A DNA stretch of 64,000 nt, from positions 77,068 to 141,067 of the forward strand of contig NIVC01000832.1 in the NCBI GenBank assembly GCA_002269645.1, read 5' to 3'. A program made the translations under genes and the position numbers. Below the pieces are notes generated by a model. The model saw only the letters and a list, made by a program, of their open reading frames with translations. It ran no database searches and was not told the origin of the DNA. Positions 8,656-59,749 of the stretch are shown here, piece after piece. Within the stretch, counting starts at the first letter, position 1. Each line of letters starts with the position of its first letter. This DNA comes from Macrostomum lignano. Taxonomy: Eukaryota.

Positions 8656-9204
8656 TGTGTCTATTTTATCGTAATACTCGTAATTATGTCATCAACAATA
8701 CGGGGTTATATATTGAATCAGAATTCAAATAAAAGTCGAAGACGAGTTACTGGAATAACGAAGTATATTTAATTTACATTAGAAACAATATGCACACTGG
8801 TAAAGCTATGATAAATGTTAGTGTAACACGAAACACAGTTTACACTTTAGAGAAATATTAGGAAACAGAATAAAAAAGAATATTATTATGTCCATGACAT
8901 CAGTATGAAGCACTCATATGCTGTATATATCATACTTTCGTCCAGAATACATGCCCGTCGTTTACCCCGCTTCTAGGCGGCTGCGACACCGGGCGTAGTA
9001 TCGGATGAATTTCCGGATGCTAATTTGCAGACATCCAGAAGTCATCCGGAATTTAGTTCTGTTCTAAGGGGGCCCGGTTTCTCATGCACAGAGCAACCGG
9101 ATTGATCCGGACATATGGCGGACCAAAAGTCCGAAAAACAACTTTCGTCCGGATTTCACCCGGAATTCACTCCTGACTTTTAAGAATAATTGGGAAGAAT
9201 AATT

Positions 9205-10362
9205 GGAAAGTGATCACTATTCAGGTCGTCGCCCACTTTGAAGTCCTGGATGAACGGGACAAGGTCGCTGGAGGCCAGACCCAGGTCCAGCACATTCCGA
9301 GAGACCGTACCTTGCCGGTGGGCTATTCTGGTAAATTGACCTGGTTGATTTAGGACAGTGGGACGATTTACAGGGTCGCTACAGAGCCAATCATGAAGCT
9401 GCTGACCAGCCCTGTTGTTGCGACTTTCGCCCCCCCCCCAAAAAAAAAGGTGTGTCTGGCGTTGAGGTCACCCATAATAAGAGAATACTTGGCCGAGGAC
9501 AGCCGAGTCTAAAGACCGACATCAAGGTTGTCAGGCGATGGAGACCGATAGATCAGGGCCAGTTTGAATGCAGGGCAAGGGCCGTCAAGAGGGGTGACTG
9601 TGCAGGTAAGAACCTCGTGGTTGATGTTGTCGTACGAAAGCTGGACATCCGCTACATTCACATGAGGGGTGTGTACGAGGAGGAGTCCGCGCTTCGTATT
9701 TGGAAGGTCGAACCGCACTGCAGCGTAGCCCAGGAATGTGCATATTTAGGTATTTTTCAGGATGGTCTCAGAAAACAAGGCAATATCCAACTTTTGGTCT
9801 GAGATCCAGAGCCCGAGTTCTTTTAGTTTTGGTATTATCCCCCTGCAATTTAGGTGGGCGATCTTAAGCCCTGAGGCAGTGGGGTTCGAGCTATCGTGCC
9901 CGTTATTACCGAACGTATTTAAACATTTACATTCTAGGTCTGGCCATCTACCTGTCGCCGGGGAGCGCCAAGCAGCTGACCAAGACCTTGGTGACTTTCT
10001 AACCCGCCTACGAGGACACGGGACAGAACCCTACTCACTATGTCGTGCACTGTTTGACCAGAGCCTTCAGTAGTAAGCGGCCCTTCGGCTATGCTCGGCC
10101 AGAGGGTTGTAAGCACCTCAGCGAGTGCTTGAACCAGGAGAGGAAGTAGCCCACTCACCATTCCTAGATATTCAGAATTTACGCTAGCAATCGGTGGCGT
10201 ACTGTTGTTTGGTGGCATACTCGGCACAGTCGTCTGGGTCATGGAGTCGGTCAATTCGCGCACGGGGCGCTTTCGGCTATGGAGGCTAGGGCCAGTCAGC
10301 CATGGCAAATCGCCTCCTGTCGCCATTGACGCCCGTGCCGCGGCGTCGGCTGACCTAGACAT
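9205..10362 (-). mobile_element. Fragment of a family-A-related LINE (ORF1 C-terminus plus APE endonuclease N-terminal part); called A'
   Basis: Colinear with 17555-18700: RFDLPNTKRGLLLVHTP, LKIAHLNCRG...FSETILKN, GDLNARH, and VSGLLPLLVQALAEVL...HQGLGQLLGAPRRQVDGQT. Confidence 0.9.
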
Positions 10363-10740: not shown

Positions 10741-12337
10741 TGTAGAAAAAATACTAAACTAAACTAAAGACTATTTAATTGGAGTTAAATTGTAGGATCA
10801 GATAAGCCAGTAAGTGGGCGCAGGGCCCAAACCGATATATTTATAGAACATTTAACTTTGGGGGGTTGAGCCCAGAAAAATAAAGAGAGGGGGTGGAGTG
10901 CGCGACTGAGGAAAGAGGCGAGAACGGAGAGCCAATCAGAACGCAGCAAGGGAGAGAGAGATAAGAGTAACAAGATTGAGCTAGACAGAGAGAGAGAAAA
11001 CAGAGTAAACAGAGACAAGTGAAGGTGAACTAAAGAAATGACTAGGAAAGTCGCGACATGACTAGACAGAGAGATGTAGATGTAGTCTTTTCAGTCTTCT
11101 CATTGGTTCAAAAACTACTCAATAAAAGTCTAAGTTTAAAATTCGGTCTTAATATTTTGCATTCACTCTAATGTTTTAGTATTCAAATTCTTACTCATTA
11201 TGTGTTTTTCAAATCGTTCTGTACACCATTTATTGTGAATGTGTTCTCCAATTTAATTCGACCTAATTCTAACTCATTAATTTCAATTGGTAATGGTACT
11301 CGAATATTAAAAAAAATGTTCCATTTTTTGGGGGGAGTGTCGCGACTTTCCTAGTCATTTCTTTAGTTCACCTTCACTTGTCTCTGTTTACTCTGTTTTC
11401 TCTCTCTGTCTAGCTCAATCTTGTTATTCTTATCTCTCTCTCCCCTGCTGCGTTCTGATTGGCTCTCCGTTCTCGCCTCTTTCCTCAGTCGCGCACTCCA
11501 CCCCCTCTCTTTATTATTCTGGGCTCAACCCCCCAAAGTTAAATGTTCCATAAATATATCGGTTTTCGTCTCTGGTTGCCGGCCTCTCAATCGTCTCGTC
11601 TCTGGTTGCCGGCCTCTCAATCGTCTCGTCTTTGGTTGCCGGCCTCTCAATCGTCTCGTCTCTGGTTGCCGGCCTCTCAATCGTCTCGTCTCTGGTTGCC
11701 GGCCTCTCAATCGTCTCGTCTTTGGTTGCCGGCCTCTCAATCGTCTCGTCTCTGGTTGCCGGCCTCTCAATCGTCTCGTCTCTGGTTGCCGGCCTCTCAA
11801 TCGTCTCGTCTGCCGGCCTCTTCATCGTCTCATCTCTTATTGCCGGTCTCGTCTTCGGAGTCTGTGCCGGCAGCATATTCACATTTCAACTCGGGCTGTC
11901 GGTCTCGTCTTCGGAGTCGGTGCCGGCGGCATTTCTCTCTTCTCGACTGTCGTTCTCGTCTTCGGAGTTGGGCCGGCGGCATATTCGCAGCTCTACTTGG
12001 GCTGTCGGTCTCTGCTTCGGAGTTGGGCCGGCGGCATATTCTCTCACTCGGTTGTCGGTCGCTGCTTCGGAGTCTGTGTCGGCAGTCAATCTCACCGGCC
12101 TCTTGTCAAATTTTCTTCACTCAGTTCCACTCCTCTCTTGTCAATGTATTCAGTCGTCTCCAGTCGTTCTTTTCATCAACCTGATTCTCATCTCATCTCA
12201 TCTCTCGTACTCAACTGACGATATTTTTAATATTTTTTCTGTACTGTACATGTACCAGTTGTCATTAGTTAAAAATTGCACATTTTTAAGGGGGAGGGCT
12301 GGTCTATCCAGTCTCATCTATATGTCGATGGATAGAC
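10741..12337. mobile_element. Unclassified 1.6-kb insert flanked by GGC direct repeats, with an internal long inverted repeat and a terminal hairpin
   Basis: GGC at 10738-10740 and 12338-12340. Inverted arms 10829-11058 / 11338-11565. GTCTATCCA...TGGATAGAC stem at 12302-12337. Confidence 0.65.
11566..11820. repeat. 30-bp tandem repeat (~8 copies), with degenerate continuation to ~12100
   Basis: CGTCTCTGGTTGCCGGCCTCTCAATCGTCT repeated. Confidence 0.95.
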
Positions 12338-12674: not shown

Positions 12675-13500
12675 GATATTTTTATGACTTATCTAAATAT
12701 GTACAGTGCAAAAGTGTTCTGAATTGGTGAGCCAACAAACAAACTTAAGGCATTAGAAAGAATAGAGAGTCATGCAGGCAGGAGGCCCCCTCCCGGCAAG
12801 GTCATGGATTTGAGATTTTTCAATCTGCGATGGCATTCCTAAGTTTGGTGGTCACAGGAACTTTGTGACCTGGTCTAAGCCAGTCTTTTATGTCCAAGTC
12901 AAAGCCGTGGACCCCCGTAAGCACGGCTTTTTTGTACCATTTCTTGCCCAGGTTCCAGATTCTCTCCTTGAACCTGGGAATTTTGGAGATGTCATGTAAG
13001 TAGCTAATTTTAGTATAAACAGGCGCATCTAGAGAAATTCTGAGTGCCTGGTTTTGGAGAACCTGAAGTTTTTGCAGGAGTGTGTCCGAAGCATTTACTA
13101 GAACTGGAGCTCTATACGTCATATCACTTTCTATGTAAGACCTGTAGATAAGTCTTAGCGCAAGCTGAAAGATTCTGGTATTGCGAGCAATTCTTCTTAA
13201 GGACCCAAGTTTGGAGAACGTTCTGCCAGCAACCTTGGAGATGTGCAGATCATATTTAAGTTATTTGTCAAGAGTAACACCTAGAAAAGTAACGGAGTTG
13301 AAATACTTGATCTCTTCATTGCCAAGCTTAAGCAGAGGTTTATCCGGACCTGAGATTCGTTCGTTTTGATACTTGAAGAATGAAATAACCTTACTTTTGG
13401 AAGGATTAATACTAATTCCAACATTATCAAGCCATTTTTCCAGGGTGACCAAGTAACCATTAAGACGCTTGGCGGCCATGCCCGTTTTCCTAAAAGATAA
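12675..13500 (-). mobile_element. 5'-truncated LINE related to family B (RT thumb and ORF2 C-terminus); called C
   Basis: GISINPSKSKVI...VTFLGVTLDK; APVLVNASDTLLQKLQVLQNQALRISLDAPVYTKISYLH closely parallels 22829-23200. Confidence 0.85.
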
Positions 13501-15405: not shown

Positions 15406-18260
15406 CTAGGGCGGGTTTTGGGCCGCCGCATTTGTAGCTGCTTGTCTATTAGCTTGCCTCCTCTTCAGGCTGTCCCATAGCAGGTTCAGCACTGGGGGGC
15501 GGTTGCGGGCAGCTCTAGAGAGTTCCGGCTCAATGTGGAAATCGTGGTGCCCAGCAGCCTTCACCTTGGAGAGCCAGCCTACGCCCAGGGCACGAATCCT
15601 GTCTGCCATCATAGGCATGGCTGCCAGCTCATGCAGGTAGGCTACCTGGGTGTAACTAGGGGCACCATAGCAGATCCTAAGAGCTAAGTTTTGGATTTTC
15701 TGGAGCTTATTGAGATTGCTGGGTGCAATGATGTTCAGCACCGGGGCACCGTAAGTCAGCGCACTCTCAACATATGCCCTATATAGCATTTTAAGGGTAT
15801 TACTACTTAGCCGGGTCAGCTTGGCAATGCGGTTAATGGACAGGGCAAGCGCCCGGCCGTGGCTGACTACTCTTTCAACATGCGAGTTAAGGGTCAGCCG
15901 GTAGTCCAGGTTCATGCCAAGGAACCGGACCTCTTCTTGGTATTCAAGACTCGTGCCTCCAAGTTTCAGCTTAGGGCGAAGGTCGAGCCGCTAAGTTGGC
16001 TTATAATTGAATGCAATAACCTGACTCTTGCTGGCGTTGATCTTAATCCCCTGCCCCCCACACCACTTCCACACGCGGTCAAGGTAGAGTTGCAGGAGTG
16101 TCTTGAGGCCAGCAAAGGAGTCCGCCGAGGCCCAAATGGCCATGTCATCGGCAAATTGGCTTCGCTTGAGGTTTGGTTGTCTTGGCCGAGGCAGGGTGCT
16201 GATAAAGAGCAGGTACAGGAAGGGGCTCAGAATACCACCTTGGGGGACGCCTGCCTGTAGCTCGTACGGCTGGCTGAGCTCCCCATTTACCTTCACCTGC
16301 ATTAGCCTGTCTGCTAGGTAGTCAGAGCAGATCCTGACGAGGGCGTCCGGCGTGTTGACTTCGTACATTCTGAACCTCAGGTAGTCATACCACACCGAAT
16401 CGAACGCCGCTTGTACGTCAAGGAGGATGGGCAGAATCATTTTTAGTTTAGCTTTGCCCACCTGGACGTCTTGGACGAGGCGGACAAGATTATCATAAGT
16501 TGAGTGGACCTTCCGGTACGCACATTGATCCGCGCCGAGGATACCCTGGCCCTCAAGATGCTTCATCAGCCTCCTCACCAATAACTTCTCGAACACCTTG
16601 CCGAGACAGGAGGTCAGGCTAATGGGCCGATAGGATCCCGGGGATTCAGGAGGTTTGTCAGGTTTAGGAATCATCGTCATCACCGCTTTTTTTCCACTGC
16701 GATGGGAAGATGCCCGTACGATAGCAATCATTGAAGAGTTTAGTGATGCGGGTGACTGCTATAGGCTCTAGGCCATATTTAAGGACGCAGATCGGAACTT
16801 TGTCTAGGCCCGGAGCACTGTCAACTTTTAGGTGGTCCAGCTCCCAGAGGGTGTCTGTAACAGAAAACGGAGCCTCCAGGGGGTGGCCCATGTATGGATC
16901 TGCGCCCGAGGGGACTGGTCTAAAGATGGGGAGCTTCATAGCCTGCTCAACCCTCTTCTTCAGATCCTCGTCAGTCGATGGAATCGGGCGCATTTTGACA
17001 TCTAGTGCTCTCGCTAGCATATCAGCTTTGTCTGAGTCAGTATGTGCGAGGGTGGCGCCATCGTTTAAGGACGGAATAGTGGTGCCCTTTTTGCGCCCCA
17101 TCAATTTTTTTGTGTCCTGCCAGAAGTCCTTGACATTCTGGCATTGACTTTTTTCAACTATTTTCTTGCACATTTGGGTAAACTGGCCTTGCTCAAACGA
17201 ATGAATAGCGCTTTTTATTTCTTTCGCCTTTCTATTCGCGAGCAGGCTAAAATTGTCATCCCTGGTACTGTGGTACTGACGCCGGAGCTTCCTCCTCTCC
17301 TTGATCATGGCAATGATCCTCTGGGGGAGGGCTCTACGGCCGTTTCTGACCGGGACATTGTCCTCGATGGTTTTCTGGATCGCGTTCGTGATGACGTCGA
17401 CCTCCGCATCAATTTGCTGGTCTGGAGGCCACGCATGTACCAGTTTTTCCATCAAGGAGTTTTGGAACTCTTCCCAGTTTGCTTTGGCAAAGTTCCTAGC
17501 CTTCTCCGGCCCTTGCCAATCTGGGGAGTTACTCGCCAGGGTGAGTATGATTGGGAGATGGTCACTGTCCAGGTCAGAGCCCACTTTAAAGTCTTGAACA
17601 AATGGGACGAGGTCACCGGAGGCTAACCCAAGGTCGAGCACATTCCGGGACACAACGCCTTGCCGGTGGGCTATTCTTGTGAACTGGCCTGGTTGGTTGA
17701 GAACGGTGGGGCAGTGGGACGGATCGCCGCAGAGTAAATCATGGAGCTGCTGCCCTGCTCTGTTGTTGCGACTTTCAGCACCCAAGAAGCTGTGTCTAGC
17801 ATTGAGGTCTCCCATGATGAGCGAGTATTTTGCCGAGGACAGCCTCGTCAAAAGTCCGGTGTCGAGGTTGTCCGGCGACGGGACCGGTAAACCAGGGATA
17901 GTTGGAAAGGTGGACATGCGCCGTCAACAGGAGTGACCGTGCAGGTAAGGACCTCATGGTTGACGTTGTCGTACGAGAGCTGGACGTCTGCTACCTTAAC
18001 CCGTGGGGTGTGAACAAGGAGGAGTCCGCGCTTCGTATTCGGAAGGTCAAACCGCACTGCAGCATAGCCCGGGAAAGTGCATACTTAAGTATTTTTCAGG
18101 ATGGTCTCAGAAAAACAGCGCAACATCCAATTTCTGGTCTGAGACCCAGAGCCTTAGTTCTTTTAGTTTCGGTATTACCCCCCTGCAGTTTAGGTGGCCG
18201 ATCTTAAGCCCTGAGGCAGTGGGGTTCGAGCTATCGTGCCCGTTATTACCGAACATATTT
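15406..18260 (-). pseudogene. LINE-A ORF2: AP-endonuclease plus reverse transcriptase, broken by frameshifts and an in-frame TAA
   Basis: LKIGHLNCRG, SET, GDLNARH, VLDLGL, SDHLP (APE). PGLDKVP, YRPISLTSCLGKVFEKL, LDVQAAFDSVW, GVPQGGILSPFLYLLF, QFADD (RT). LYRAYVESALTYGAPV. Confidence 0.92.
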
Positions 18261-18273
18261 ATCCTATATTATT

Positions 18274-21204
18274 CTAGGTCTGGCCACCCACCTGTCGCCG
18301 GGAGGCGCCAAGCAGCTGACCAAGGCCTTGGTGACTGTTCGATTCGCCTTCGAGGACCCGGGCCAGAACCCTGCCTACTACGTCTTGCACCGTTTGACGG
18401 GAGCTTTCGGTAGTAGGCGGCCGTTCAGCCGGGCTCTGCCAGAGAGTCGACAGCACCTCAACAAGTGCCTGGACCAGGAGGGGAAGGAACCCACTCACTA
18501 GTCCCTGAAGCTGGGAGACTTCTCTGGCAATTGGCGGCGTGTCATTGTTAGTAGATTCATCCGGCACAGTTGTCTGCGTCTCCGAGTCGGTCGATTCGCG
18601 CACAGGGCGCTTCCGGCTTGGGAGGCCAGGGCCTGTAAGCCAAAACGAGTCGTTGCCCCCTGTCGCCGTTGTCGCCCGTGCTGCGGCGTCGACCTAACTC
18701 GGTGCTGCTGCCGGTGCTGGTGCCGGTGCGGAGGCGGGGGCAAGTAGCGCCGCTGCTGCCGCTTCCGCTGCTGATTCTGCTACTGCCGCTGCTGCCGCAA
18801 TAGGTGATGGAGCGGCCAACCTGTCTGTTGCTGCCGCGGCTTCTTGGGCGCCCGCTGCGTAGGCAGCCGCACGCCTTTGGGCCGCGTTGTGGCAATCGAC
18901 CGCCACCTGGCAGTGGCGGTAGTTAGCTCTGTGCTGCTCGTTGCAGTTAGCACATTTCACCGCATTCTGGTTATCGCAGTCTCGCCAGTGGTGCTCGGCC
19001 GCGCAGATCCGACAACGCTTGGCCGCCTTGCACCTCTGGGCGTGGTGACCGAAGCGCTGGCAGTTTTGGCACTGCGGTGCTCGTGCCGGAGCTGCGGTCT
19101 TGTTTGGCTCGCACTGGTAGGTTGTGAAATCCGTAACGATTCCTGTGGCTAGACAGGCATCTACGGTCTGCTTATTTCGGACAAAGACCCTGATTAGGTT
19201 AGTAGGCTTGTTGTCTCGCCTAGCAGTGATGCGGCTAGCTGATATAATATTAAGACCCGCGCTCTCTTGCAGGTGCCGCTTGAAGTCGCTGGCCTCGACC
19301 TCCTGAGGCACGCCGCGCACCACGAACGAGTAGACCGCTCGGGTCATCGGTCGCTGTGGCGCAGCAGGCCTAGCTCTTGGGTCCGGTCGAGCCTTTGGTA
19401 GACGCCTCGTTACCGGCCCTCCAGCAAACTGGGTCTCGCGCTGAGGCCCACGCAGGAACAACTGGTGGTCTCGCGGAGTAGCCGGAAACACGAGGAAGCC
19501 GACTTCATGGGTCAACTTCTTGGTGAGTGTAGCCCGGGCCGACCCTTGGAAGTTGGCCGCGAGCCACTTTAGAAACTCTATTTGACTAGCTTCTGCCGCA
19601 GTGTTAAACACTACTGGTACCACATTACTTCCCCGGTTATTGTTCGAGGGCCGTGATACATCCTGGTTGTTATTCGCCGCCATTTCAGCGTAGGAACGGC
19701 GATAGCCGCCCCGCCCCGCACCGCCGACGTTGCCGCCGCCGTTGCCCTGGGCTCGTGGGCCGCCAGGGACTGCAGAGCCGGGCGCGCCGGCCGCTCCGCG
19801 GTCTCCTGGCTGCCCGCTGGTCATAGCTGTCCGGGAGCCCGGCGCGGCCAGGCTGGCGCCCGCCCGGCCACTGCCAGGCCCTTGCACGATAGGTGCTGCT
19901 GCCGCGGTCGAGCCTCCGTGTCCCAGTGTGCCGACGCCAGGTGGATATGTCACCCTAAAGGTGAGAGAAATGCGTACACCCTCCTGGACGCCGACTCCTG
20001 GGACACTGTGCTTACATGCGCCGGACATTACTATCACTGAGCCGGGCTTTGTCTCGAATTGCGCTACTATTCGCTGGTCCTCATTGTTCTTAATTAGGAA
20101 TTGGCGTACTGCACCAAAGGAGACCGTAGCGATGAAAGGGTCCCTGCCGAGTTCGGATTCGTTATCGGCGTGGAAAGGTATGCAGTCATCAGCCGTTTCG
20201 TAAAAGTTTATGAGGCAGCTGTTAAATTTTGGTGCACCAATATCCGCGTTGAGCTCGAGGTAGTCTCTCATGTCTTCAACTAGCGGGTGCCATTTTTGGT
20301 TAGCGCCGAGCGGAACTCCAGAGTAAGAGTACTCCGGCCCGAACCAAACCACTCGCCGCTGTTCCTGAGGCCGGTGACGTATAGCGATAGGCAGGAGGTC
20401 TTGGATCAGCCGGTCATAGACATCGGCGGCTACGCTACGGAGCATATTCGGGTAATACTCCAGTCATACGTCTTGGCTAGGCAGCTTGACTTGAAGTGCC
20501 GATTTGTCCGCGCCTCTTGGAAAGCTAATTGGATTTTCATACGGTATGCTTGTATCCTCAGCGTCAAGATCAACACAGCCGGCATTCGCGGAGTCTGCCT
20601 CAGACGCAGAATCAGATGCTGCTGCGGCTGCGTTGGGGTCCTCGGAGCCGGTTTGGCCAGCACCTTCCAACACAGTCGCAGAGCCGCTGTCCGACGAAAT
20701 TGAAACGACACTGCCCGGTGACTTGTGCTGCTGTTTTGCCGTGATAGCAAGTACTGGCGACTTCGGAATGGTAGACACATTGTCACCCGTACAATTTGGT
20801 TTCGCTTTAGGTTTTTCGGCATTGTTTGGCAAGGTCTCAGGCGTTGCCTTAATTGCCTGTTCTCTGGGCGTCGGTGGCGTATCCGATGGCGGAGCGATGG
20901 TACAATCCATTTCAGCTGGGCAGCCAAGGGCTGCGAGGCTATAAGGGGCATCCGGCGGGATGCAATCAGCACTCGTCTTGGAGGCCCTATTACTTTTGGG
21001 CTCCTTGAAAGCTGCACCAGCTGCGCCTGAGATCGTAGCTGCGCTAGTAGGACCGGCAGGTGGCCGTTCGGATTTTCTGCCTAGACCAAGCAGGCTACGG
21101 CCGTACAACTCCATTTTGTCTATGGAGGATCTATTGTCGGCACGCTTCGCCGCAGGTAGGCCAGATGGTTTAGCAATCTTTGAGGGTGATACCTGCTTGC
21201 TCAT
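18274..21204 (-). CDS. LINE-A ORF1 in a single frame with two in-frame stops: low-complexity N-terminus, AlkB 2OG-Fe(II) dioxygenase (~19951-20463), RRM-like region, three CCHC knuckles (18910-19071), helical C-terminus
   Basis: ORFs 20464-21204, 18694-20445 and 18274-18603 share one frame. NSCLINFY...FHADNESELG...VSFGAVRQF...KHSVP...RISLTFR. CQNCQRFGHHAQRC, CRICAAEHHWRDC, CANCNEQHRANYRHC. Confidence 0.9.
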
Positions 21205-22828: not shown

Positions 22829-25560
22829 TTATAATATGGCTTTCCTGAATTTAGTCGTAACGGGTTCTCTGAACCCTGGTCTGCTCCATTCTTTAAGATC
22901 TAAATGAAAATTATGTACCCCTGTGAGCAGAGCCTTTTTGTACCACCTAAGGCCTAGGTTCCAAATCCTCTCCCTAAGCCTAGGCATCTTGGTGATTTCG
23001 TGTAGGTAGCTGATTTTAGTGTATATGGAGGCACTTAGCACAAATCTCAGTGCCTGATTTTGAAGCCGCTGAAGTCTCTGGATGATGTTATCAGAGGCGT
23101 TGACGAGGATTGGTGCTCCGTAGGTCATGCTGCTTTCTATGTAGAACCTATAAAGAAGTCGTAGCGCAAGCTGGGATATTCTTGTGTTGCGAGCGACCAA
23201 CAGTTTTTGAGACGTGTTGCCTATAATTTAGATCCTTTTCGAGCGTGACGCCAAGGAACGTGACAGAGTCGTGGTATGGAATTGAGTCCTGTCAAAGTTT
23301 GAGCGGAGGTTTGGCAGGGCCGGTGGACCAGGGACTCTTGTACCTAAAGAAAGCCACCGCCTTGCTTTTGGTGGGATTAATGGATATGCCAATATCATCT
23401 AGCCATTTTTAGGACAACAAGGTAGCTGTTCAACCTCTTGGCCGCCATTGTAGAGGTTCTGGCGCTCGCCCAGACGGCCAGGTCGTCCGCAAACTGACTC
23501 TTCTTGACTTTAGTGTCACGCGAGATGGGGATCGAGCTGACATAGATAATGAATAGCAGTGGAGAAAGTACCCCTCCTCGAGGAACTCCAGCAGCGGGCC
23601 TAAAGCCCTTGCTAATTGCCCCCCCCCAGCCTGGATGATCTCCCTATCCTCAAGGTAGCTGGAGATGGTCCGAGTCATGTTGTGCGGCAGGTCGCTCTCC
23701 AGGAGACGATACCGGAGATAGCTGTGCTAGACTCCGCCAAAGGCACCCTTGACGTCGAAGAAGACACCGAGCGACACATGTCTCCATAAATTCATTTTTA
23801 GTATATCGTCTGTGAGTCGCACAATGTTGTCAAACGTACAATGATCTTGTCTGTACGCACATTGGTCTTCATTAATAATGCCCTTGTTTTCTAAGATTTC
23901 TGGCAATTATTTTTTCGTAAAGTTTTCCCAGGCAGGAGGTTAGGCTGATAGGCCAGTAATTGTTTATTTCATGCCTAAACTTCTTTGGTTTTGGTATCAT
24001 TTTGATAGTCGCCCGCTTCCAGGCCTTGGGAAAATAGCCCAGAAAAAAGCTTGTGTTGAAAATTTTTGCAATAGTTCTAACAGAGTCCGGACTAAGCCCT
24101 CGTTTGAGGACAATGTTTGGGATCTGATCAGGGCCAGGGGCTCCCCCAGATCTAAGATTTTTTGTTTCCATGAGGACGTCTATATCCAGAATGTTAAGGA
24201 TGTCAGATTCCATGGCTTCCCTACCAGGGTCATCAGGGTCAGTTCTGTCCCGGTGATAGGTCAGGGCTCTGGCCATGCAGTCGTAGGGCCGGAAGATCTC
24301 ATGATTTTCCTTAGAAATAACCTCCTTTTAGATAAGGGACTTGGTGTCGGGATGAGGCTGCATTTGGTCCTTGAGGAAATCTTGAAATAAGTTTGCAGTT
24401 TCTTGCTCAGTTTCGGCAGTCACCCCTTTGTAGCTAAGGGCGGGAAATGAGACTGGTTTAATATATTGTCCGGTCATTTTCTTTATGTCGATCCAGAATT
24501 GACAGGGTTCTTTTCTGTAGCTAGTTTTAGCAATTTTCTGGCATACATTCTCAAATTTTCTGTACCTATGCATTCTTATAGCAATTCTTATTTCTTTAGC
24601 GGCTTGGTTTGCCTGTACTCTAAAAGCGTCAATTCTGGTTTTTTGAAAAGTTTTTGAAGCTTTCTTCTGTTCCTAATCTTTTCTACAATGTCTGGAGGAA
24701 GCTGTTCTCTCGGATCCCTATCTGGGACCACCTACTCTATTGTTTCATGGATTTTTTCCGTGAGCTTATCAACCACGTTGTCAAGATCATCGGGAGTGAA
24801 GATTCGGGAACGAATCATGCTGCAGTTTTCTAAATTATCTTGGAGTGCATACTTAAAAGCTTCCCAGTCAGTGTGCCAAAAACTCTTGGATGGCTTTGGT
24901 TTAACCTTGGAGCAGGGGTCGAGGAAGACTTTAATCATAATGGGTAGGTGATCACTATCAAGGTCATCGCCCACTAAAACATCACTAACAGAGTTGACTA
25001 GATCAGGGGAACAAATACCTAGATCAAGAACATTCCCGATAATGTTGCCCCCTCTATTATAAATCCTGGTGCAGTCACCAAAGGAGTTGAGGATAGAGGG
25101 GGGATCAGGGTGATTATCGAGCCAATCGAATAGCTGTTTGCCTGGGAAGTTTTCTACACTGTCCCCACCTAGCATAGAGTGACAGTTGAGATCCCCTAAT
25201 AGTAAGGATCTGGGTTGGGAGAGCAGCTGCTCAAGCAGTGCAGTGCTGATATGGTCAGGATTGGGAGCTCTGTAGATAACAGAAATCCTAAGAGTACTAC
25301 AGGGATTGTTGTTGGGAGTGACATCAAGGCTGATAAGCTCATAATTGGAATTGTCATAATATTTATTGACATTTCAAATTTTAAAGTTATTCTTGTAGGC
25401 AATTGCCAGTCCCCTTCTGCAGTCAGGAGTGTCATACCTGATGATGGCATAACCTTGTACATAAAAAGTATCAATATTTTTAAGATCGGTTTCAGAGAAA
25501 ATACTGTTACAAGTCTGTCTTTTGTATTGCGTTATATTTACGCAAGTTGTGTGCCGTGCA
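22829..25560 (-). pseudogene. LINE-B ORF2 (APE plus RT), multiple frameshifts
   Basis: FSETDLKN, GDLNCHS, VLDLGI, DSDHLP; PGPDQIPN, WKRATIKMIPKP, WPISLTSCLGKLYEKII, SQFADDLAVW (~23480-23500), FYIESSMTYGAPIL. Confidence 0.9.
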
Positions 25561-25878
25561 CTCTCGGCTCTTGCAGCCGTTGCTCTTATCAGTCTTCTTG
25601 AATACTTATGTATTTCTATTTTTTGTCACGAAGGCTCTTTGACACTTGCGCCAACTAATCGCAGTACAGGCAAATAAACTTGTCTATGGCAATTACAAAT
25701 TAAAGCTCAATCTGCTCGGGCAGAAGCCAGCCCGCAGCAAAGACCAATGTCAATATCGTCATTGTGCAACCACATAATAATTTCGTGCATTTTGTTGCTT
25801 AATTTGTTGCAGTTAAGGTGTCCTATGTTTAGTGCACTTTTGGAAGATTTATTATAGAAAGCCATAGTAAGTCAGTGA

Positions 25879-28145
25879 TTATTCAGGGCTGGATCCGCCT
25901 CCGCTCACCGAAGTGGCTTTGGTTTCCCCTGCCCTGACAGCGGGCACTCTTCCGTGATTCAGGAAAGTCGCCAGGACTTCCGTCACTACCCGAATAGCAA
26001 GCTGGCTTGCTTCCCAGGCAGTGAGCAGACGCCCCGGTTCGATCTCTATGATCCGGTTGAGTGCCCCGAGAACCACCTCGAGCACGTCACCCTGAGTAAA
26101 GCCCTCTCACCGTTTCCAGCAGAAGAAGTGGCGGCATTGTCAGTGTTATTTGGATCGGCATTGATTGGTGTCATTGCAGGCTTCTTGGTCACAGGAGCTT
26201 TAGTCTCAGACGGCACTGCTGAATGGGCGGCAGCGGCGGCAGCAGCAGCAGCAGACGACATTGCTGGTTGGGCGGCAGCAGCAGCAGCAGTAGACGGCGC
26301 TGCTGGCTGGGCGGCAGCAGCGGCAGCAGCAGCAGCCTTGAACGCTTTGGAAGCTCTGTTCTCGAACGCGATTGGTCCTAGTACTGGCACCTGATTGACA
26401 GCCTCCGCGTACGAGACAGGGCCAGGTACGCCAAATGTCTCAGCTAGATTTTGAGTAGGTTCTAATTTTCTAGTCTGTTTGAATTTAAGTCTTAAAGTTT
26501 GAACTCTATGATGCTCTCTTTCAGTCGCCCTCTCATTTGCATGCTGAACCTTTGGGCATTTGAAGGAGAACGCCGGGTGTTCACCCCCACAATTAGCGCA
26601 CTTAAAGCCCGTATCTTTTGGGCAGTCGCCGGAATAGTGCGCCCCGGCACACTTGTTGCAAACAAAACCGGCGTTGCACCTGCTTTCGGTGCGTCCAAGG
26701 CCTTGACACCTGTGGCACTGAACTTCCTTGACCGGTGGAAGATTGTGCGATTCTTCGCACCCGAGTTTCAATGCCCCAAGCTTAATGCCGTTCTCCAGGC
26801 AGGTGTCGTAAGTTGCCCTTGACTTTGTAAACATCCTGATGAGAGGTGTCGGTTGGCCTGAGGCCTTCGAGACAATGCGTACCGCACTGTCGAATTAAAA
26901 ATGTGCCTGATTTTCATCTAAATATTGCAGCAGTTCCTCGGCTTCCACGGCTAGAGGAACACCTTTGACGATGAAGGAGCGGACCTGCGGCGATTTAAGG
27001 GGCTTACGCAGCCGATCATCGCCTTGGTGCAGTGGCCTATTTGACGGCAGGCGCCTAGTGACAGTGTGCCCATTAATTTCGTTAACTTTTAGTGTTGTTG
27101 TCAATAAGTTGTTCATATCGTGTGGAGAATTAGTAAATTACGTAGTGTCCTGAGCTATGACACGATGATGACACGATGCGAGTGTTAGGAAAGTTTGTTT
27201 TTAAGAAATATTCGAATTTAATAGGATTCTTAGCCTCAACGGGCATCTCAAATACAACTGGCGTAATTTTAGTTAATTTAGAATTATTAGATTGTTGTGA
27301 GCTTGGCTGCTGAGTGCGTGCTTGTGGCTGCTGAGTGTGTGTGCTTGGCTGCTGAGTGCGATTGGTTGATTGCTGAGTTGCTAGCCCCACTCATTATCGT
27401 GATGCTACCACTGGCAAGCCTCTGCGAGTAGACTATATTCTAAATCTGGCCCTTTAGTTCGAAGCTGGAAGTCTCTCTGGGCTCCCAGCGACACCGACAC
27501 AATGGTCGGGTCGTGGCCTAACTCTGGTTCGTTGTCAGAGTGCCATGGGATGGCTACCGATCCATCTTTATAAAATTTGATCAGGCACGAATTAGCTAGT
27601 GGCACTCTAAGCTCGACGTGAAGCCAAGTGGCTAAGTGAGTGACGACTGGGTGCCAAGCGTCGTTGCACTCAATCTTAGTACCCCCATAGGTGTACTCAG
27701 GCCCATACCAGACTATTCTCCTGGCCTCAGGCTTGCCCTTGGTTAGATGGTGGTATGAGTTTGGATAAATGTCTTCCATTATAATTTTAATTAGCTTGGC
27801 TTCAGAAGATTTGAGCTGCTGATTTTGCAGTTAGTTAAAGGCTGGCTAGTTTTGTCATCTGTGAGGTCAGGTTCTGGTAGACTGAGTGTCAATATGTTAG
27901 TTGCTTTTCCTAAGTCTGCTAGTTTACTACTCTTGACAGGCTGACTCTCACCATCGCTGACCGCATGAGGGAGGTTCTTCAGTCACTGTCTGCTGTTGCA
28001 CACAAGACGGCTCATTGCTGGAGGACGCAGAACAGGACCTTTGGTCTCGACCGGAAGAGGACCGGTTGTTGCGCTTCTTGGTGCTGACTGGCGGCGAGTC
28101 AGTGTCTCTAGAACCACATCTTTTGCTATTGACTTCTACTTCCAT
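25879..28145 (-). pseudogene. LINE-B ORF1: partial AlkB domain (27405-27830), Gln-rich linker, RRM-like region, zinc knuckles, Ala-rich tail
   Basis: RRIVWYGPEYTYGG...NSCLIKFY...WHSDNEPELGHDPTIVSVSLGAQRDF; SFIVKGVP; CHRCQGLGRTESRC, CNKCAGAHYSGDC, CANCGGEHPAFSFKC. Confidence 0.87.
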
Positions 28146-29391: not shown

Positions 29392-29899
29392 CGGGTGACC
29401 AGTCGTATTGTGGGCTCCCCTTCCTTACAGGAGAGGTCGCGCATATGTAGTAAATAGAGTATAAAAAATTGTCGCATTTAGAAAAGGATTTAACAGTTGA
29501 GCAATAGTTGTAAAAGGAAAGGCACTATAAAAAAGCAGCATGGACTAGATAATAATTTGGCTTAATTTTGACAGGCGAGATCTACTATCCCGCAGCCTTC
29601 TCCATCAGCTCGGTTAGTTTTACTAATCGGTCTAATGGTGGTTCTGGGATCTTATGGTTTCTCCAAGCTTGCTTGGGAGGGGGGACTTCGAATCCATGGA
29701 TGGCATTAGCTATAGCTTTTTGGTGGCTACCATTTGGTGGCTACCTTCTCTACCCTGGGCTTTACCATGGGTATGTTTGCTATTTTGTGCAGGTAGTTAA
29801 TTTTGGTGAATTTAGGAGCGTTATAGCACAGTCTGAGGTTGGTGTTTTGGATATGCTGCAGTTTGGTGAAATTAGATTAGAGGAGCTAATGGAGTTGTC

Positions 29900-45622: not shown

Positions 45623-46103
45623 GGGCTCGCGACTTGATTCTTGTTTGAGACGTTGCGCAACAAAAAGCTACCCCGCGTTCTTGAATTTGGCGTGCTTGCG
45701 TTGCTCAGTTCCGGCGCAGCAAAAAAATTGTCGGTTGGGGGGAGTCCCCCATTGATATATTAGTTCTACTGAGAAAAGTCGAGCATCTGAATAGTTCCGA
45801 TACCTAATGGACTGGCGATTAAATCCCAGGATTAGACCTTAGATCAAGGAGGTCGGATTGCATAATTTTTATTTACATCCTGCAAATGAAATGAAATTCA
45901 ATAGTTTAATTGAACAGTGAGTTCCGATTTCTTATTTAGCATTTCAGGGAACCGTTTGAATGAAGCCAACTTTACCTGTTTTTATCTGTATCTATCAATT
46001 GCAACCCCACCCTTATTAGGGGATGTTTGCACACAAACCCAAACTAAACTTGATCAGGTAATTTGGGGTTGCTTGTTTCAAAACTACCCTATATTTAATT
46101 TCT

Positions 46104-47123
46104 CAGGTAATTAGGGTTTTCAGCACCCAACCATCTTTAATTACTCAGGTAATTAGGGTTTTCAGCACCCAACCATCTTTAATTACTCAGGTAATTAGGG
46201 TTTTCAGCACCCAACCATCTTTAATGCTCAGGTAATTAGGGTTTTCAGCACCCAACCATCTTTAATGCTCAGGTAATTAGGGTTTTCAGCCCCCAACCAT
46301 CTTTAATTTCTCAGGTAATTGGGGTTTTCAGCCCCCAACCATCATTAAATTCTAAGGTAATTAGGGTTTTCAACCCCCAACCATCTTTAATTTCTCAGGT
46401 AATTAGGGTTTTCAGCACCCAACCATCTTTAATGCTCAGGTAATTAGGGTTTTCAGCCCCCAACCATCTTTAATTTCTCAGGTAATTAGGGTTTTCAGCA
46501 CCCAACCATCTTTAATTACTCAGGTAATTAGGAGTTTTCAACGCCCAACCCATATTTAAATACTCAGGTAATTAGGGTTTTCAGCACCCAACCATCTTTA
46601 ATTTCTCAGGTAATTAGGGTTTTCAGCCCCCCAACCGTCTTTAATTTCTCAGGTAATTAGGGTTTTCAGCCCCCAACCATCTTTAATTTCTTAGGTAATT
46701 AGGGTTTTAAGCCCCCAACCATCTTTAATTTCTCAGGTAATTAGGGTTTTCAGCACCCAACCATCTTTAATTTCTCAGGTAATTGGGGTTTTCAGCCCCC
46801 AACCATCTTTAATTTCTCAGGTAATTAGGATTTTCAGCCCCCAACCATCTTTAATTACTCAGGTAATTAGGGTTTTCAGCCCCCAACCATCTTTAATTTC
46901 TCAGGTAATTAGGATTTTCAGCCCCCAACCATCTTTAATTACTCAGGTAATTAGGAGTTTCAGCACCCAACCATCTTTAATTACTCAGGTAATTAGGGTT
47001 TTCAGCACCCAACCATCTTTAATTACTCAGGTAATTAGGGTTTTCAGCACCAAACCATCTTTAATTTCTCAGGTAATTAGGGTTTTCAGCACCCAACCAT
47101 CTTTAATTACTCAGGTAATTAGG
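46104..47123. repeat. 42-bp minisatellite, ~24 copies, most units containing TTAGGG
   Basis: AGGTAATTAGGGTTTTCAGCACCCAACCATCTTTAATTTCTC. Confidence 0.97.
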
Positions 47124-52190: not shown

Positions 52191-52289
52191 CTGCGCGGTT
52201 GAGGTTAAAAAAATTGATAGTGATATTTTTTTGTATTGAAGTAGTCATACAGAGGCCATTCCTGCCTTGAAGTGGACTGTATCGCGTTT

Positions 52290-53305
52290 AGGTGGACACC
52301 CTGTCCTCAAGTGGACACACTGTCCTTAAGTGAACACCCCTGTCTTGAAGTGGACACCCTGTCCTCAAGTGGACACCCCTGTCTTGAAGTGGACACCCCT
52401 GTCCTTAAGTGGACACCCCTGTCCTTAAGTGGACACCCTGTCCTCAAGTGGACACCCTGTTCTGAAGTGGACACCCCTGTCCTTAAGTGGACACCCCTGT
52501 CCTTAAGTGGACACCCCTGTCCTTAAGTGGACACCCTGTCCTCAAGTGGACACCCTGTTCTGAAGTGGACACCCCTGTCCTCAAGTGGACACCCTGTCCT
52601 CAAGTGGACACCCTGTCCTCAAGTGGACACCCTGTTCTGAAGTGGACACCCCTGTCCTCAAGTGGACACCCTGTCCTCAAGTGGACACCCTGTCCTCAAG
52701 TGGACACCCTGTCCTCAAGTGGACACCCTGTTCTGAAGTGGACACCCCTGTTCTTAAGTCGACACTCCTGTCCTTAAGTGGACACCCCTGTCTTGAAGTG
52801 GACACCCCTGTCCTTAAATTGACACCCCTGTCCTTAAGTCGACACTCCTGTCTTGAAGTGGACACCCCTGTCCTTAAATTGACACCCCTGTCCTTAAGTC
52901 GACACTCCTGTCTTGAAGTGGACACCCCTGTCCTTAAGTCGACACTCCTGTCCTTAAGTGGACACCCCTGTCCTTAAGTGGACACCCCTGTCTTGAAGTG
53001 GACACCCCTGTCCTTAAATTGACACCCCTGTCCTTAAGTTGACAGCCCTGTCTTGACGTGGACACCCCTGTCCTTAAATTGACACCCCTGTCCTTAAGTG
53101 GACACCCCTGTCTTGAAGTGGACACCCCTGTCCTTAAATTGACACCCCTGTCCTTAAGTTGACACCCCTGTCCTCAAGTGGACACCCTGTCCTCAAGTGG
53201 ACACCCTGTCCTTAAGTGGACACTCCTGTCCTTTAATGGACACCCCTGTCCTTAGGTGGACACCCAGTCCTCAAGTGGACACCCTGTCCTTAAGTAGACA
53301 CCCCT
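52290..53305. repeat. 18-20-bp minisatellite, ~50 copies
   Basis: GTGGACACCC(C)TGTCCT(T/C)AA. Confidence 0.95.
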
Positions 53306-53652
53306 GTTTTTTCAATTCACTACGTTCGACAGGTTGGTCAAAATATTTTTTTTTCAAAATGCAGCAACGATAGACTCAGCTCTCATTTCAGCGTCTGGGA
53401 GTTGAAACCAACGATATTGAAAGAGACGTGCAAGCCAGTAAGAAATGAAAAAATGTTTAGCAAGATCAACAGCATACAAAAAAGAAACTTGAAATTGCCA
53501 TTTCCCACAGTAGCCCCAGATCCGAGACACTTTGACGCCGTTAAGAAATTCGTCAAGGCAAAATTGAGCAAAAATTTGCTTGGCTCATAATTCTCCGTTC
53601 CCTCCTAGGAAAAAATGCAAATTACTGCTAATAAACTGAAACTGCATCAAAC

Positions 53653-59075: not shown

Positions 59076-59749
59076 GAGGTGACTACTACAGAAATGCGAG
59101 CCGCCACTTTTCACAAGACCCTGAACGCAGCGGGAGCCAACTTTCTCTTCAAAGTTGCCAATCAACGGGGGGCGGACAAAGAAGGTGCATACGAATTTGG
59201 TTGAAAATGGGAGGAGCCAAACAAGAAGGACAGATCAGGGGGGGGGGGGCTGAGTCAGGCCAGACCAGCGCGCCAATGCAAGTGATTGATTTACAATGCA
59301 GAGCTGGCCGCCATGTCGCCTTCGACCCCATTCTCCTTCCTCTGTCCCTCCCTGTTCCCTCCAGACTGCCAAGCCTCACTATCTGGGCAATGCGATTTTC
59401 AAAATCTATCCTGCAGGTCACGACGTATGCCAGTCTGAGTCTGAGCAGTGGCTGGCCTATAAATTATTTATAATCCAACAAGAATGCAAGATTTGATCAG
59501 AGGGCAGAGTTCCCGGGTTTTATTCTTACTCCAGTTGAGATCCGATCTGGGCTCAATTGAATATTTAAGTACCAGTCGAACTACGAGTATTAAACTGCAG
59601 CATGGCCGGTCTGAGAGAGTCTGATGATAAAGAACGAATTTAAGTCATGTGGTATCAATATTTTATATGAATATGGGAACAATGGCTAATTATGACCGAT
59701 TTTGAAGCGGCTCTGATCCGTCACCCTCACCCGCCTCTCCGCTCTCTCA

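What the first reader, a model, noticed from the sequence alone, without database searches (positions are those of the whole stretch)
18274..21204. LINE ORF1 carrying an in-frame AlkB-family (ALKBH2/3-like) dioxygenase domain
Seen: in the 583-aa ORF (18694-20445), residues ~1-165 read RRVVWFGPEYSYSG...NSCLINFY...FHADNESELG..PFIATVSFGAVRQF...GSVIVMSGACKHSVP...RISLTFR. This supplies the full Fe(II) triad (H92, D94, H146), the N-x-Y motif and the RxxxxxR 2-oxoglutarate-binding pair (R158, R164). In the same frame it runs into a gag-like RRM region and three CCHC knuckles, and an APE-RT ORF2 follows. Established: these motifs define AlkB oxidative demethylases; ALKBH2/3-type enzymes remove m1A/m3C from DNA and RNA; some plant RNA viruses carry AlkB domains that repair RNA; ORF1p coats LINE RNA in the RNP. 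The ORF1 accessory domains I know of are RRM, PHD, esterase and CCHC; I do not recall AlkB, but I cannot check the literature. Inference: the retrotransposon may carry its own methyl-eraser on the RNP, to clear RT-blocking lesions or host-applied methyl marks from its RNA or single-stranded cDNA. Caveat: the segment between MSG and the distal His is ~4-5 residues shorter than in ALKBH2/3.
Basis: partly seen in the sequence, partly recalled or inferred. Interest (0 to 1): 0.93.

Follow-up and report, generated by a model that had tools for sequence, protein, structure and literature searches.

The report
LINE retrotransposon with built-in AlkB demethylase
This is a decayed copy of a flatworm LINE retrotransposon whose RNA-coating protein (ORF1p) carries an ALKBH3-like demethylase domain; intact, selectively conserved relatives exist elsewhere, so a jumping gene appears to carry its own nucleic-acid methyl-eraser.

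Summary
The minus-strand ORF 18694-20445 has an AlkB domain (Pfam PF13532, E=6e-20). Human ALKBH3 is the best match by sequence and by fold. All Fe(II) and 2-oxoglutarate ligands are present. The domain runs in frame into two RRM folds and three CCHC knuckles, and an APE-RT ORF2 follows.

This copy is dead. ORF1 really spans 21204-18274 and has two in-frame stops, one of them inside the AlkB domain. A 4-residue deletion before the distal His is specific to this copy. ORF2 has a lost start, several stops and a frameshift.

The fusion is not a local accident:
- A second, more decayed AlkB-LINE lies at 22859-27815.
- Macrostomum lignano has the same architecture, including an intact ORF2.
- Public read assemblies hold intact AlkB-RRM-CCHC ORF1s followed by APE-RT ORF2s.

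The AlkB domain is among the most constrained parts of ORF1 (dN 0.23-0.32 against 0.69-0.72 for the linker).

Most likely function (inferred): an ALKBH3-type eraser of m1A/m3C, held on the element's own RNA or single-stranded cDNA.

The ten literature searches found no description of an AlkB-bearing LINE. The precedents are plant-virus AlkB domains and an orchid Gypsy element. I also found an AlkB-bearing Penelope-like element.

The parts
18274..21204 (-). Full ORF1 of AlkB-LINE copy 1: 977 codons including two internal stops and the terminal TAG
   Evidence: A single reading frame runs from the ATG at 21204. Stops are at codons 247 (TGA), 837 (TAG) and 977. The N-terminus and C-terminus are homologous to M. 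lignano ORF1 pieces.
19894..20550 (-). AlkB (2OG/Fe(II) dioxygenase, ALKBH3-like) domain
   Evidence: Pfam PF13532 E=6e-20. The HMM envelope covers residues 219-437 of the joined ORF1. PDB ALKBH3 E=7e-20. AF2 plus Foldseek match ALKBH3.
20464..20466 (-). In-frame TGA nonsense codon inside the N-terminal part of the AlkB domain
   Evidence: Relatives read through at this position.
19954..20208 (-). Catalytic core, numbered on the 583-aa ORF: N80-x-Y82, H92-x-D94-x-E96, H146, R158-x5-R164. A copy-specific 4-codon deletion lies between codons 144 and 145 (about 20013/20014).
   Evidence: These columns are invariant in the 66-sequence alignment. The deletion is seen against the other retroelement-borne copies.
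19615..19920 (-). Gly/Ala/Pro-rich low-complexity linker between the AlkB domain and the RRMs
   Evidence: Translation. The equivalent linker is the fastest-evolving part of ORF1 in relatives (dN 0.69-0.72).
19402..19614 (-). RRM-like domain 1 of ORF1p
   Evidence: AF2 model pLDDT 89.9, strand-helix-strand-strand-helix-strand order of elements. Foldseek hits tandem-RRM proteins.
19105..19332 (-). RRM-like domain 2 of ORF1p
18910..19071 (-). Three CCHC zinc knuckles (CX2CX4HX4C, CX2CX3HX4C, CX2CX3HX6C)
   Evidence: The Cys and His columns are nearly invariant in the 55-sequence gag alignment. Sequence read.
18694..18696 (-). Second in-frame stop (TAG), which truncates ORF1 before its conserved C-terminal segment
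   Evidence: The M. lignano ORF1 and P0131 continue through this point.
18274..18693 (-). Conserved C-terminal segment of ORF1p, now cut off by the TAG
   Evidence: Homologous to the C-termini of the M. lignano gag ORF and of P0131.
15406..18199 (-). ORF2 (APE endonuclease plus reverse transcriptase), degraded. The start codon is lost. There are five stops at 17926-18109, a frameshift near 16690 and a stop at 15993.
   Evidence: tblastn against the intact M. lignano ORF2 gives 49% identity (N-terminal two thirds: APE and the region before the RT core) and 64% (RT half). Pfam PF14529 and PF00078. Lesions listed.
27405..27815 (-). AlkB remnant of a second, older AlkB-LINE (copy 2). It keeps N-x-Y and H-x-D-x-E; the C-terminal half is frameshifted or lost.
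   Evidence: tblastn gives 40% identity to copy 1. ORF and frames. In the alignments it sits closest to M. lignano P0132-P0134.
26046..27321 (-). RRM/CCHC gag part of copy 2 (fragmented)
22859..25505 (-). APE-RT ORF2 of copy 2 (fragmented)
   Evidence: tblastn against M. lignano ORF2 gives 30-42% identity in four pieces.

Best explanation
The locus is a dead copy of an APE-type LINE from a flatworm lineage (Macrostomum or a close relative). ORF1p in this lineage has the order: disordered N-terminus, ALKBH3-like AlkB dioxygenase, low-complexity linker, two RRMs, three CCHC knuckles, C-terminal helix.

Shown: the architecture, its recurrence in several diverged families with intact copies, retention of every Fe(II)/2OG ligand, and strong amino-acid constraint on the domain.

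Inferred: in intact copies the domain is an active oxidative demethylase. Because it is fused to the protein that coats the element's own RNA, it would work in cis on the LINE RNP. There it would remove N1-methyladenine and N3-methylcytosine type lesions or marks from the RNA template, and possibly from single-stranded cDNA or target DNA during target-primed reverse transcription. Such bases stall reverse transcriptases, so their removal would raise the yield of full-length cDNA. The same logic was shown for the AlkB domains of plant flexiviruses.
For: AlkB identity:
- Pfam E=6e-20.
- ALKBH3 is the best PDB match by sequence and by fold (TM up to 0.82).
- N80, Y82, H92, D94, E96, H146, R158 and R164 lie in invariant columns.

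The fusion is a family trait:
- A second AlkB-LINE lies in the window.
- M. lignano locus L001 has AlkB, then RRM/CCHC, then an intact 926-aa APE-RT ORF2. Its tandem second copy has AlkB in frame with gag.
- An exhaustive search of 1.84 billion representative proteins found ORF1s of 757-962 aa whose match to the query spans both AlkB and gag.
- L004 has an intact 843-aa AlkB-ORF1 plus an intact 948-aa ORF2.
- L016 adds another member.
- Identical ORF1s occur in 3-4 sequencing runs.

Constraint:
- P0122 vs P0123: AlkB dN 0.233 (dN/dS about 0.11, dS saturated), CCHC 0.207, RRM 0.30, linker 0.72.
- P0124 vs P0125: AlkB 0.32, CCHC 0.20, RRM 0.37, linker 0.69.
- All full-length retroelement-borne copies keep NxY, HxDxE, the distal His and RxxxxxR.
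- Window vs M. lignano identity: AlkB 50-54%, gag 41%, N-terminal two thirds of ORF2 (APE and the region before the RT core) 49%, RT half 64%.

Mechanistic plausibility:
- m1A impedes a non-LTR (R2) reverse transcriptase, and AlkB treatment relieves it (PMC12140624).
- Viral AlkB domains repair m1A/m3C in RNA (PMC2553587).
- A retrotransposon-encoded AlkB has been shown to be an active demethylase (orchid Gypsy, PMC9289625).
Against: - No biochemical or expression data exist for any member.
- The window copy itself cannot make the protein: it has two nonsense codons, a 4-residue deletion that removes a nearly invariant Gln next to the distal His, and a broken ORF2.
- dS is saturated (1.2-2.2, or not computable), so dN/dS values are rough.
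- Substrate (m1A/m3C vs m6A; RNA vs DNA) is inferred only from the ALKBH3-like fold and the conserved HxDxE.
- Whether the Logan contigs are transcripts or genomic DNA is unknown.
- In human cells m6A promotes L1 and ALKBH5 suppresses it (PMC7873242 abstract). An eraser is therefore not automatically beneficial to a LINE.
Confidence: 0.6

Rival explanations
1. The domain is an m6A eraser. It would strip host-installed N6-methyladenosine from the LINE transcript to escape m6A-dependent decay, sequestration or chromatin silencing, as proposed for the orchid Gypsy AlkB.
For: A retrotransposon-encoded AlkB with m6A demethylase activity exists (PMC9289625). Host m6A pathways act on retrotransposon RNAs (titles and abstracts listed). 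From my own knowledge, ALKBH3 has reported activity on m6A in tRNA.
Against: The domain is closest to ALKBH3 and ALKBH2 (E=5e-14 to 1e-10). ALKBH5 sits far lower (about 2e-7, TM 0.6-0.68). ALKBH5 and FTO do not appear in the sequence search at all. The HxDxE motif typical of AlkB/ALKBH2/3 is invariant. In human cells m6A promotes L1 and ALKBH5 suppresses it (PMC7873242 abstract).
Confidence: 0.15
2. The domain acts in trans on host molecules rather than on the element's own RNA. Examples are tRNA demethylation to boost translation, or repair of host single-stranded DNA. Alternatively it serves mainly as an extra nucleic-acid-binding module with catalysis being dispensable.
For: From my own knowledge, ALKBH3 acts on tRNA and ssDNA. 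The domain is joined by a long flexible linker, so it could reach other substrates.
Against: All Fe(II) and 2OG ligands are invariant across families that are only 30-45% identical. This argues against a purely structural role. Fusion to the cis-acting RNA-coating protein, rather than a separate ORF, favours action on the RNP.
Confidence: 0.12
3. Chance juxtaposition, a gene-prediction artefact, or a one-off capture of a host ALKBH3 exon with no role for the element.
For: The window copy is a pseudogene. M. lignano has a cellular, intron-containing ALKBH3-like gene, P0140 (39% identical to the window's domain by BLASTP; 47% over the phmmer-matched stretch; gene structure). That gene could be a donor.
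Against: At least four diverged LINE families carry the same AlkB-RRM-CCHC order in single intact ORFs followed by APE-RT. The domain is among the slowest-evolving parts of ORF1. A more distant LINE relative (L017, ORF2 about 31% identical) lacks the domain, which fits one old acquisition that was then retained.
Confidence: 0.03

Closest known systems
AlkB domains in the replicase polyproteins of plant Flexiviridae (van den Born et al. 2008, PMC2553587)
   Same: An AlkB dioxygenase is embedded in the replication protein of a selfish element that copies through RNA. It has been shown to remove m1A and m3C from RNA. The rationale is the same: keep the template copyable.
   Different: Those are plus-strand RNA viruses of plants with an RNA-dependent RNA polymerase. 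Here the carrier is an animal non-LTR retrotransposon, the domain sits on the RNA-coating ORF1p rather than the polymerase, and the acquisition was independent.
Orchid (Phalaenopsis) Ty3/Gypsy elements encoding an AlkB protein (PMC9289625)
   Same: A retrotransposon carries an AlkB-family demethylase, and activity and RNA binding were shown in vitro.
   Different: That is an LTR element, with the domain at the C-terminus of a separate extra ORF. It is ALKBH5-like and acts as an m6A eraser. It is a recent acquisition in one plant genus. Here the domain is ALKBH3-like, fused N-terminally to a LINE ORF1p, and old enough to span families only 30-45% identical.
Human ALKBH3 (PDB 2iuw, 8jnk, 8jnr)
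   Same: Best sequence and fold match. Same NxY, HxDxE, distal His and RxxxxxR motifs.
   Different: ALKBH3 is a free-standing cellular enzyme. The retroelement-borne versions lack a loop of about 9 residues in the jelly-roll and are fused to RRM and CCHC modules. Identity is only about 34-40%.
Type I LINE ORF1 proteins (RRM plus CCHC knuckles, as in Jockey/I-type elements; Khazina and Weichenrieder classification, from my own knowledge)
   Same: Two RRM folds followed by three knuckles with the CX2CX4HX4C, CX2CX3HX4C, CX2CX3HX6C spacing. ORF2 has APE plus RT and no Pfam RNase H match (PF00075) was found.
   Different: An N-terminal AlkB enzyme domain, which I could not find described for any LINE ORF1.
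Other accessory ORF1 domains in LINEs (SGNH esterase in CR1/L2-type elements, PHD fingers; from my own knowledge)
   Same: A precedent that LINE ORF1s are modular and can carry an enzyme.
   Different: Different enzyme class and a different presumed target (lipids or chromatin rather than methylated bases).

Membership tests
AlkB family of Fe(II)/2-oxoglutarate dioxygenases (Pfam PF13532) | Profile match above the curated threshold | tested here: met
   72.6 bits against a cut-off of 31.2, E=6.3e-20. Intact relatives score 98-108 bits.
AlkB family of Fe(II)/2-oxoglutarate dioxygenases (Pfam PF13532) | HxD...H iron triad, plus the NxY and RxxxxxR 2-oxoglutarate ligands | tested here: met
   H92, D94, H146, N80, Y82, R158 and R164 lie in invariant columns. 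They are kept in all full-length retroelement-borne copies.
AlkB family of Fe(II)/2-oxoglutarate dioxygenases (Pfam PF13532) | Double-stranded beta-helix fold with the AlkB-type N-terminal extension | tested here: met
   AF2 pLDDT 89.5. Foldseek ranks ALKBH3, then ALKBH2, then ALKBH6, E. coli AlkB and ALKBH5. In this copy the N-terminal strands lie upstream of a stop codon.
AlkB family of Fe(II)/2-oxoglutarate dioxygenases (Pfam PF13532) | 2OG-dependent oxidative demethylation of nucleic-acid bases | not testable with these tools
   Needs an enzyme assay on an intact family member.
ALKBH3 orthologue group | Groups with animal ALKBH3 in a phylogeny | tested here: inconclusive
   The retroelement-borne AlkBs form their own clade in a 211-sequence NJ tree (built, clade read), but bootstrap support is only 32%. 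The sister group is unresolved among host ALKBH3-like sequences, bacterial AlkBs and AlkBs on phage-like contigs. Pairwise scores are similar: host P0140 103-124 bits, phage-like P0003 96-125 bits.
APE-type non-LTR (LINE) retrotransposon | ORF2 with an apurinic-like endonuclease followed by a reverse transcriptase | tested here: met
   PF14529 and PF00078. 49-64% identity to the intact 926-aa M. lignano ORF2.
APE-type non-LTR (LINE) retrotransposon | Multiple dispersed copies and diverged families | tested here: met
   Two copies in the window, tandem copies in M. lignano, and several Logan contigs.
APE-type non-LTR (LINE) retrotransposon | Defined termini: a 3' tail or repeat and target-site duplications | tested here: inconclusive
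   No poly(A) or obvious tail downstream of ORF2, and no homology-defined ends.
Type I ORF1p (RRM plus CCHC) | RRM fold(s) followed by CCHC knuckles | tested here: met
   Two RRM folds and three knuckles.
Jockey clade (or any named LINE clade) | RT phylogeny with reference elements | not tested
   No reference RT set was available. The only hints are no Pfam RNase H match (PF00075), the PF14529 match, and one distant hit that its source names 'X-element'.
ALKBH5/ALKBH9B-type m6A erasers (as in the orchid Gypsy AlkB) | Closest similarity to ALKBH5-type enzymes | tested here: not met
   ALKBH5 ranks far below ALKBH3 and ALKBH2 by fold and is absent from the sequence hits.

The most novel reading that the evidence does not exclude
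A mobile AlkB module has spread among unrelated retroelement classes: at least four LINE families and a Penelope-like element. It spread because base methylation of the m1A/m3C kind on retroelement RNA or cDNA is a real barrier to reverse transcription in these animals. That barrier could be endogenous damage or a host-applied mark. If so, the elements carry a counter-measure against an unrecognised layer of retroelement control.
Probability: 0.3. Interest if true: 0.9.

Novelty: new variant of a known kind. Interest (0 to 1): 0.78.

Why it matters
LINE ORF1 proteins are thought of as RNA chaperones or coats with a short list of accessory domains. A nucleic-acid demethylase fused to one would be the first case of a non-LTR retrotransposon carrying its own base-repair or epitranscriptome-erasing enzyme.

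It would be a third independent case, after plant RNA viruses and an orchid LTR element. That points to methylated bases as a general obstacle for RNA-templated replicators.

It also makes the question testable. Macrostomum lignano is a laboratory flatworm with transgenesis (PMC5730564, listed), and intact copies exist. The domain could also become a natural tool: an RRM-tethered ALKBH3-like enzyme.

Tried and rejected
- The first homologue search with the whole 583-aa ORF returned only one hit, because Ala/Gly-rich words swamped the candidate list. I repeated it with an AlkB-only alignment and with an exhaustive HMMER search.
- An exact look-up of the window's ORF found no record.
- blastn of the window against the M. 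lignano locus gave only 66-69% matches inside ORF2. The window's species is therefore not settled.
- A search for the sequencing-run accessions to identify the Logan organisms hit only an unrelated chicken paper.
- One cluster look-up timed out.
It cannot resolve whether the domain came from a host ALKBH3-like gene or from bacteria or phage.
- The YN00 estimator failed on most regions, and NG86 dS was saturated or not computable. I therefore rely on dN contrasts between domains rather than on absolute dN/dS.
- The element's ends could not be defined.
- Rejected: an ALKBH5-type identity.
- Rejected: a host-gene exon or chance adjacency.
- Rejected: the short loop before the distal His as a family trait.
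Full report
**1. What is in the sequence**

On the minus strand there is a 583-aa ORF at 18694-20445. Residues 27-164 match Pfam 2OG-FeII_Oxy_2 (PF13532) at E=6.3e-20, 72.6 bits against a curated cut-off of 31.2. Against all PDB sequences the best matches are human ALKBH3 (E=7e-20, aligned to the end of the domain) and then ALKBH2 (about 1e-10).

I aligned the domain with 65 AlkB proteins. The invariant columns were N75, N80, Y82, H92, D94, E96, G111, R114, H146, R158, L161, T162 and R164, numbered on the window's ORF. An AlphaFold2 model built on that alignment has mean pLDDT 89.5. Foldseek against the PDB ranks ALKBH3 first (E=5e-14, TM 0.77-0.82), then ALKBH2, then ALKBH6, E. coli AlkB and ALKBH5.

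Downstream in the same frame lies a Gly/Ala-rich linker. After it comes a region that models at pLDDT 89.9 as two strand-helix-strand-strand-helix-strand domains. Its best structural matches are tandem-RRM proteins such as NONO, Pub1, HuR and PABP. Three knuckles follow, and their Cys and His columns are nearly invariant in 55 gag-like sequences. Further downstream are an APE domain (PF14529) and an RT (PF00078).

**2. This copy is a pseudogene**

- The ORF 20464-21204 just upstream is in the same frame, separated only by a TGA at 20464-20466. It is homologous to the N-terminus of the Macrostomum lignano relative.
- The AlkB HMM envelope starts about 28 codons upstream of that TGA. The stop therefore lies inside the domain.
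- A second in-frame stop (TAG, 18694-18696) removes a conserved C-terminal segment that relatives keep within ORF1. The true ORF1 is 21204-18274.
It is a 4-residue deletion found only here: MSGAC----KHSVP. The corresponding stretches are MAGACQRKCEHSVP (P0002), MAGNCQKRLQHQVP (P0001), MAGACQRRLQHAVP (L016) and IMEGATQADWQHRVP (ALKBH3). The deletion removes a nearly invariant Gln.
- ORF2 (18199-15406) has lost its start codon. It has five stops between 17926 and 18109, a frameshift near 16690 and a stop at 15993.

**3. The fusion is a family trait**

(a) tblastn shows a second AlkB-LINE in the same window. The order on the minus strand is an AlkB remnant (27815-27405), gag/CCHC (27321-26046) and APE-RT (25505-22859). 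It is much more decayed and only about 40% identical to copy 1.

(b) The one hit of the first database search is M. lignano BOX15_Mlig027759g7. Its locus L001 has an AlkB ORF, an RRM/CCHC ORF and an intact 926-aa APE-RT ORF2. A tandem second copy follows, in which AlkB runs in frame into gag.

(c) An exhaustive HMMER search of 1.84 billion representative proteins found ORF1s of 757, 962 and 843 aa (P0122, P0123, P0124) that match the query in a single stretch spanning AlkB and gag, and one of 892 aa (P0125) that matches it in two stretches. It also found M. lignano UniProt entries (A0A1I8JCX4, A0A1I8GKP7, A0A1I8HIG4, A0A1I8JRS9), which are named only 'Fe2OG dioxygenase domain-containing protein'.

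(d) Contig L004 carries an intact 843-aa AlkB-ORF1 followed by an intact 948-aa APE-RT ORF2. L016 adds a further member with an intact 946-aa ORF2. Identical ORF1s recur in three or four sequencing runs.

(e) A more distant LINE (L017, ORF2 about 31% identical) has an ORF1 without AlkB. Arthropod-type gag proteins that match the RRM/CCHC part also lack it. The domain thus marks one clade of LINEs.

**4. Selection**

Synonymous sites are saturated between the available intact pairs, so I compared dN among regions of the same ORF.

| Region | P0122 vs P0123 | P0124 vs P0125 |
|---|---|---|
| AlkB | 0.233 (NG86 dN/dS about 0.11) | 0.32 |
| CCHC | 0.207 | 0.20 |
| RRM | 0.30 | 0.37 |
| Linker | 0.72 | 0.69 |
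| C-terminal | 0.48 | 0.87 (low-complexity tail) |

Between the window copy and M. lignano, identity is 50-54% for AlkB, 41% for gag, 49% for the N-terminal two thirds of ORF2 (APE and the region before the RT core) and 64% for the RT half. All full-length retroelement-borne domains keep NxY, HxDxE, the distal His and RxxxxxR, although the families are only 30-45% identical. The domain has been maintained like the element's essential parts.

**5. Origin**

Retroelement-borne AlkBs score higher with each other (112-196 bits between families) than with any cellular, bacterial or phage-like AlkB (86-125 bits). They form one clade in a 211-sequence NJ tree (built, clade read). Bootstrap support in a 58-sequence subset is only 32%, and the sister group is unresolved.

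Candidate donors:
- A cellular, intron-containing ALKBH3-like gene of M. lignano, P0140. It is 39% identical to the window's domain by BLASTP and 47% over the phmmer-matched stretch.
- AlkBs of about 200 aa from bacteria and phage-like contigs, at 36-43% identity by BLASTP over the domain.

All retroelement-borne copies share a loop about 9 residues shorter than in animal ALKBH3.

**6. Mechanism**

Shown: the architecture, the conservation and the ALKBH3-like fold.

Established elsewhere:
- AlkB, ALKBH2 and ALKBH3 remove m1A and m3C by oxidative demethylation.
- Plant-virus AlkB domains do this on RNA (PMC2553587).
- m1A impedes a non-LTR (R2) reverse transcriptase, and AlkB treatment relieves this (PMC12140624).
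- A retrotransposon AlkB can be an active demethylase (PMC9289625).

Inferred: ORF1p coats the RNA that encoded it. The fused enzyme would therefore be concentrated on the element's own template, and on single-stranded intermediates of target-primed reverse transcription, where it clears RT-blocking methyl bases. I put this at about 0.6.

Rivals: an m6A eraser (0.15), action in trans or a mainly binding role (0.12), and accident or artefact (0.03).

**7. Comparison with what is known, and novelty**

The closest systems are the flexivirus AlkB domains and the orchid Gypsy AlkB. The differences are the carrier (an animal non-LTR element), the position (N-terminal fusion to a type I RRM-CCHC ORF1p) and the subtype (ALKBH3-like, not ALKBH5-like).

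Ten full-text searches found no paper describing an AlkB-bearing LINE or Penelope-like element. One search also checked the text of one M. lignano transposon paper and found no mention. Repbase, Dfam and subscription journals could not be searched, so priority is not proven. I rate it a new variant of a known kind. It should be surprising to transposon specialists, and it is directly testable in a laboratory flatworm.

**8. Host**

The relatives that carry an organism name are all from M. lignano. The window shares no near-identical DNA with the M. lignano locus. Like that locus, it is full of 20-60 bp minisatellite arrays. The window is probably from Macrostomum or a close relative, but this is not settled.

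Noticed in passing
L007:2120-7398 (Logan SRR19430222): A Penelope-like retroelement also carries AlkB. ORF1 (P0271, 1012 aa) has a complete AlkB domain. The next ORF (618 aa) has Penelope-type RT motifs (RPIVSG, YIDD) and a GIY-YIG nuclease. Its AlkB scores higher with the LINE-borne AlkBs (122-151 bits) than with cellular ones.
   Followed up: partly
window 22859-27815 (-): A second, older AlkB-LINE lies next to the first, in the same orientation. It is about 40% identical in AlkB and aligns closest to M. lignano proteins A0A1I8JCX4 and A0A1I8HIG4.
   Followed up: yes
window 9195-9856 (-), 12829-13464 (-), 29730-29876 (-): Further LINE fragments: an APE piece 52-64% identical to the M. lignano AlkB-LINE ORF2, and RT C-terminal pieces at 36-47%. 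I did not check whether they belonged to AlkB-bearing copies.
   Followed up: no
L001:10001-21146 (M. lignano NIVC01002892.1): Two copies of the AlkB-LINE lie head to tail, 6453 bp apart. Each has a different frameshift. Only the second keeps AlkB in frame with gag, and only the first has an intact ORF2.
   Followed up: partly
L002:5328-6567 and L003:1956-3195 (Logan SRR20819504 and SRR20819493): Among the nearest non-retroelement relatives is a 188-aa AlkB on a phage-like contig (T4_Y16D and many small genes). It sits directly after a gene with a faint Dam-type methyltransferase (MethyltransfD12) hit, so a methylase and a demethylase appear side by side.
   Followed up: no
L004:4346-4717; L013:3269-3643; L014:3177-3551: A conserved small ORF of 123-124 aa with no Pfam match sits between ORF1 and ORF2 in the P0124/P0125 LINE families. 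In L004 it overlaps the ORF2 start by 8 bases.
   Followed up: no
window 43300-63800 and 1100-2140, 11560-12090: There are more than 20 dense arrays of minisatellites with 12-69 bp units, some over 1 kb (for example 46094-47123, 52288-53307, 59733-60629). They create long spurious ORFs on both strands and strong GC-skew swings at 58-64 kb. The flank of the M. lignano locus looks similar.
   Followed up: partly
L015:7001-10180 (M. lignano NIVC01000858.1): The cellular ALKBH3-like gene of M. lignano (P0140, 263 aa) spans 3.2 kb, so it has introns, unlike the retroelement-borne copies. It is a candidate donor of the domain.
   Followed up: partly
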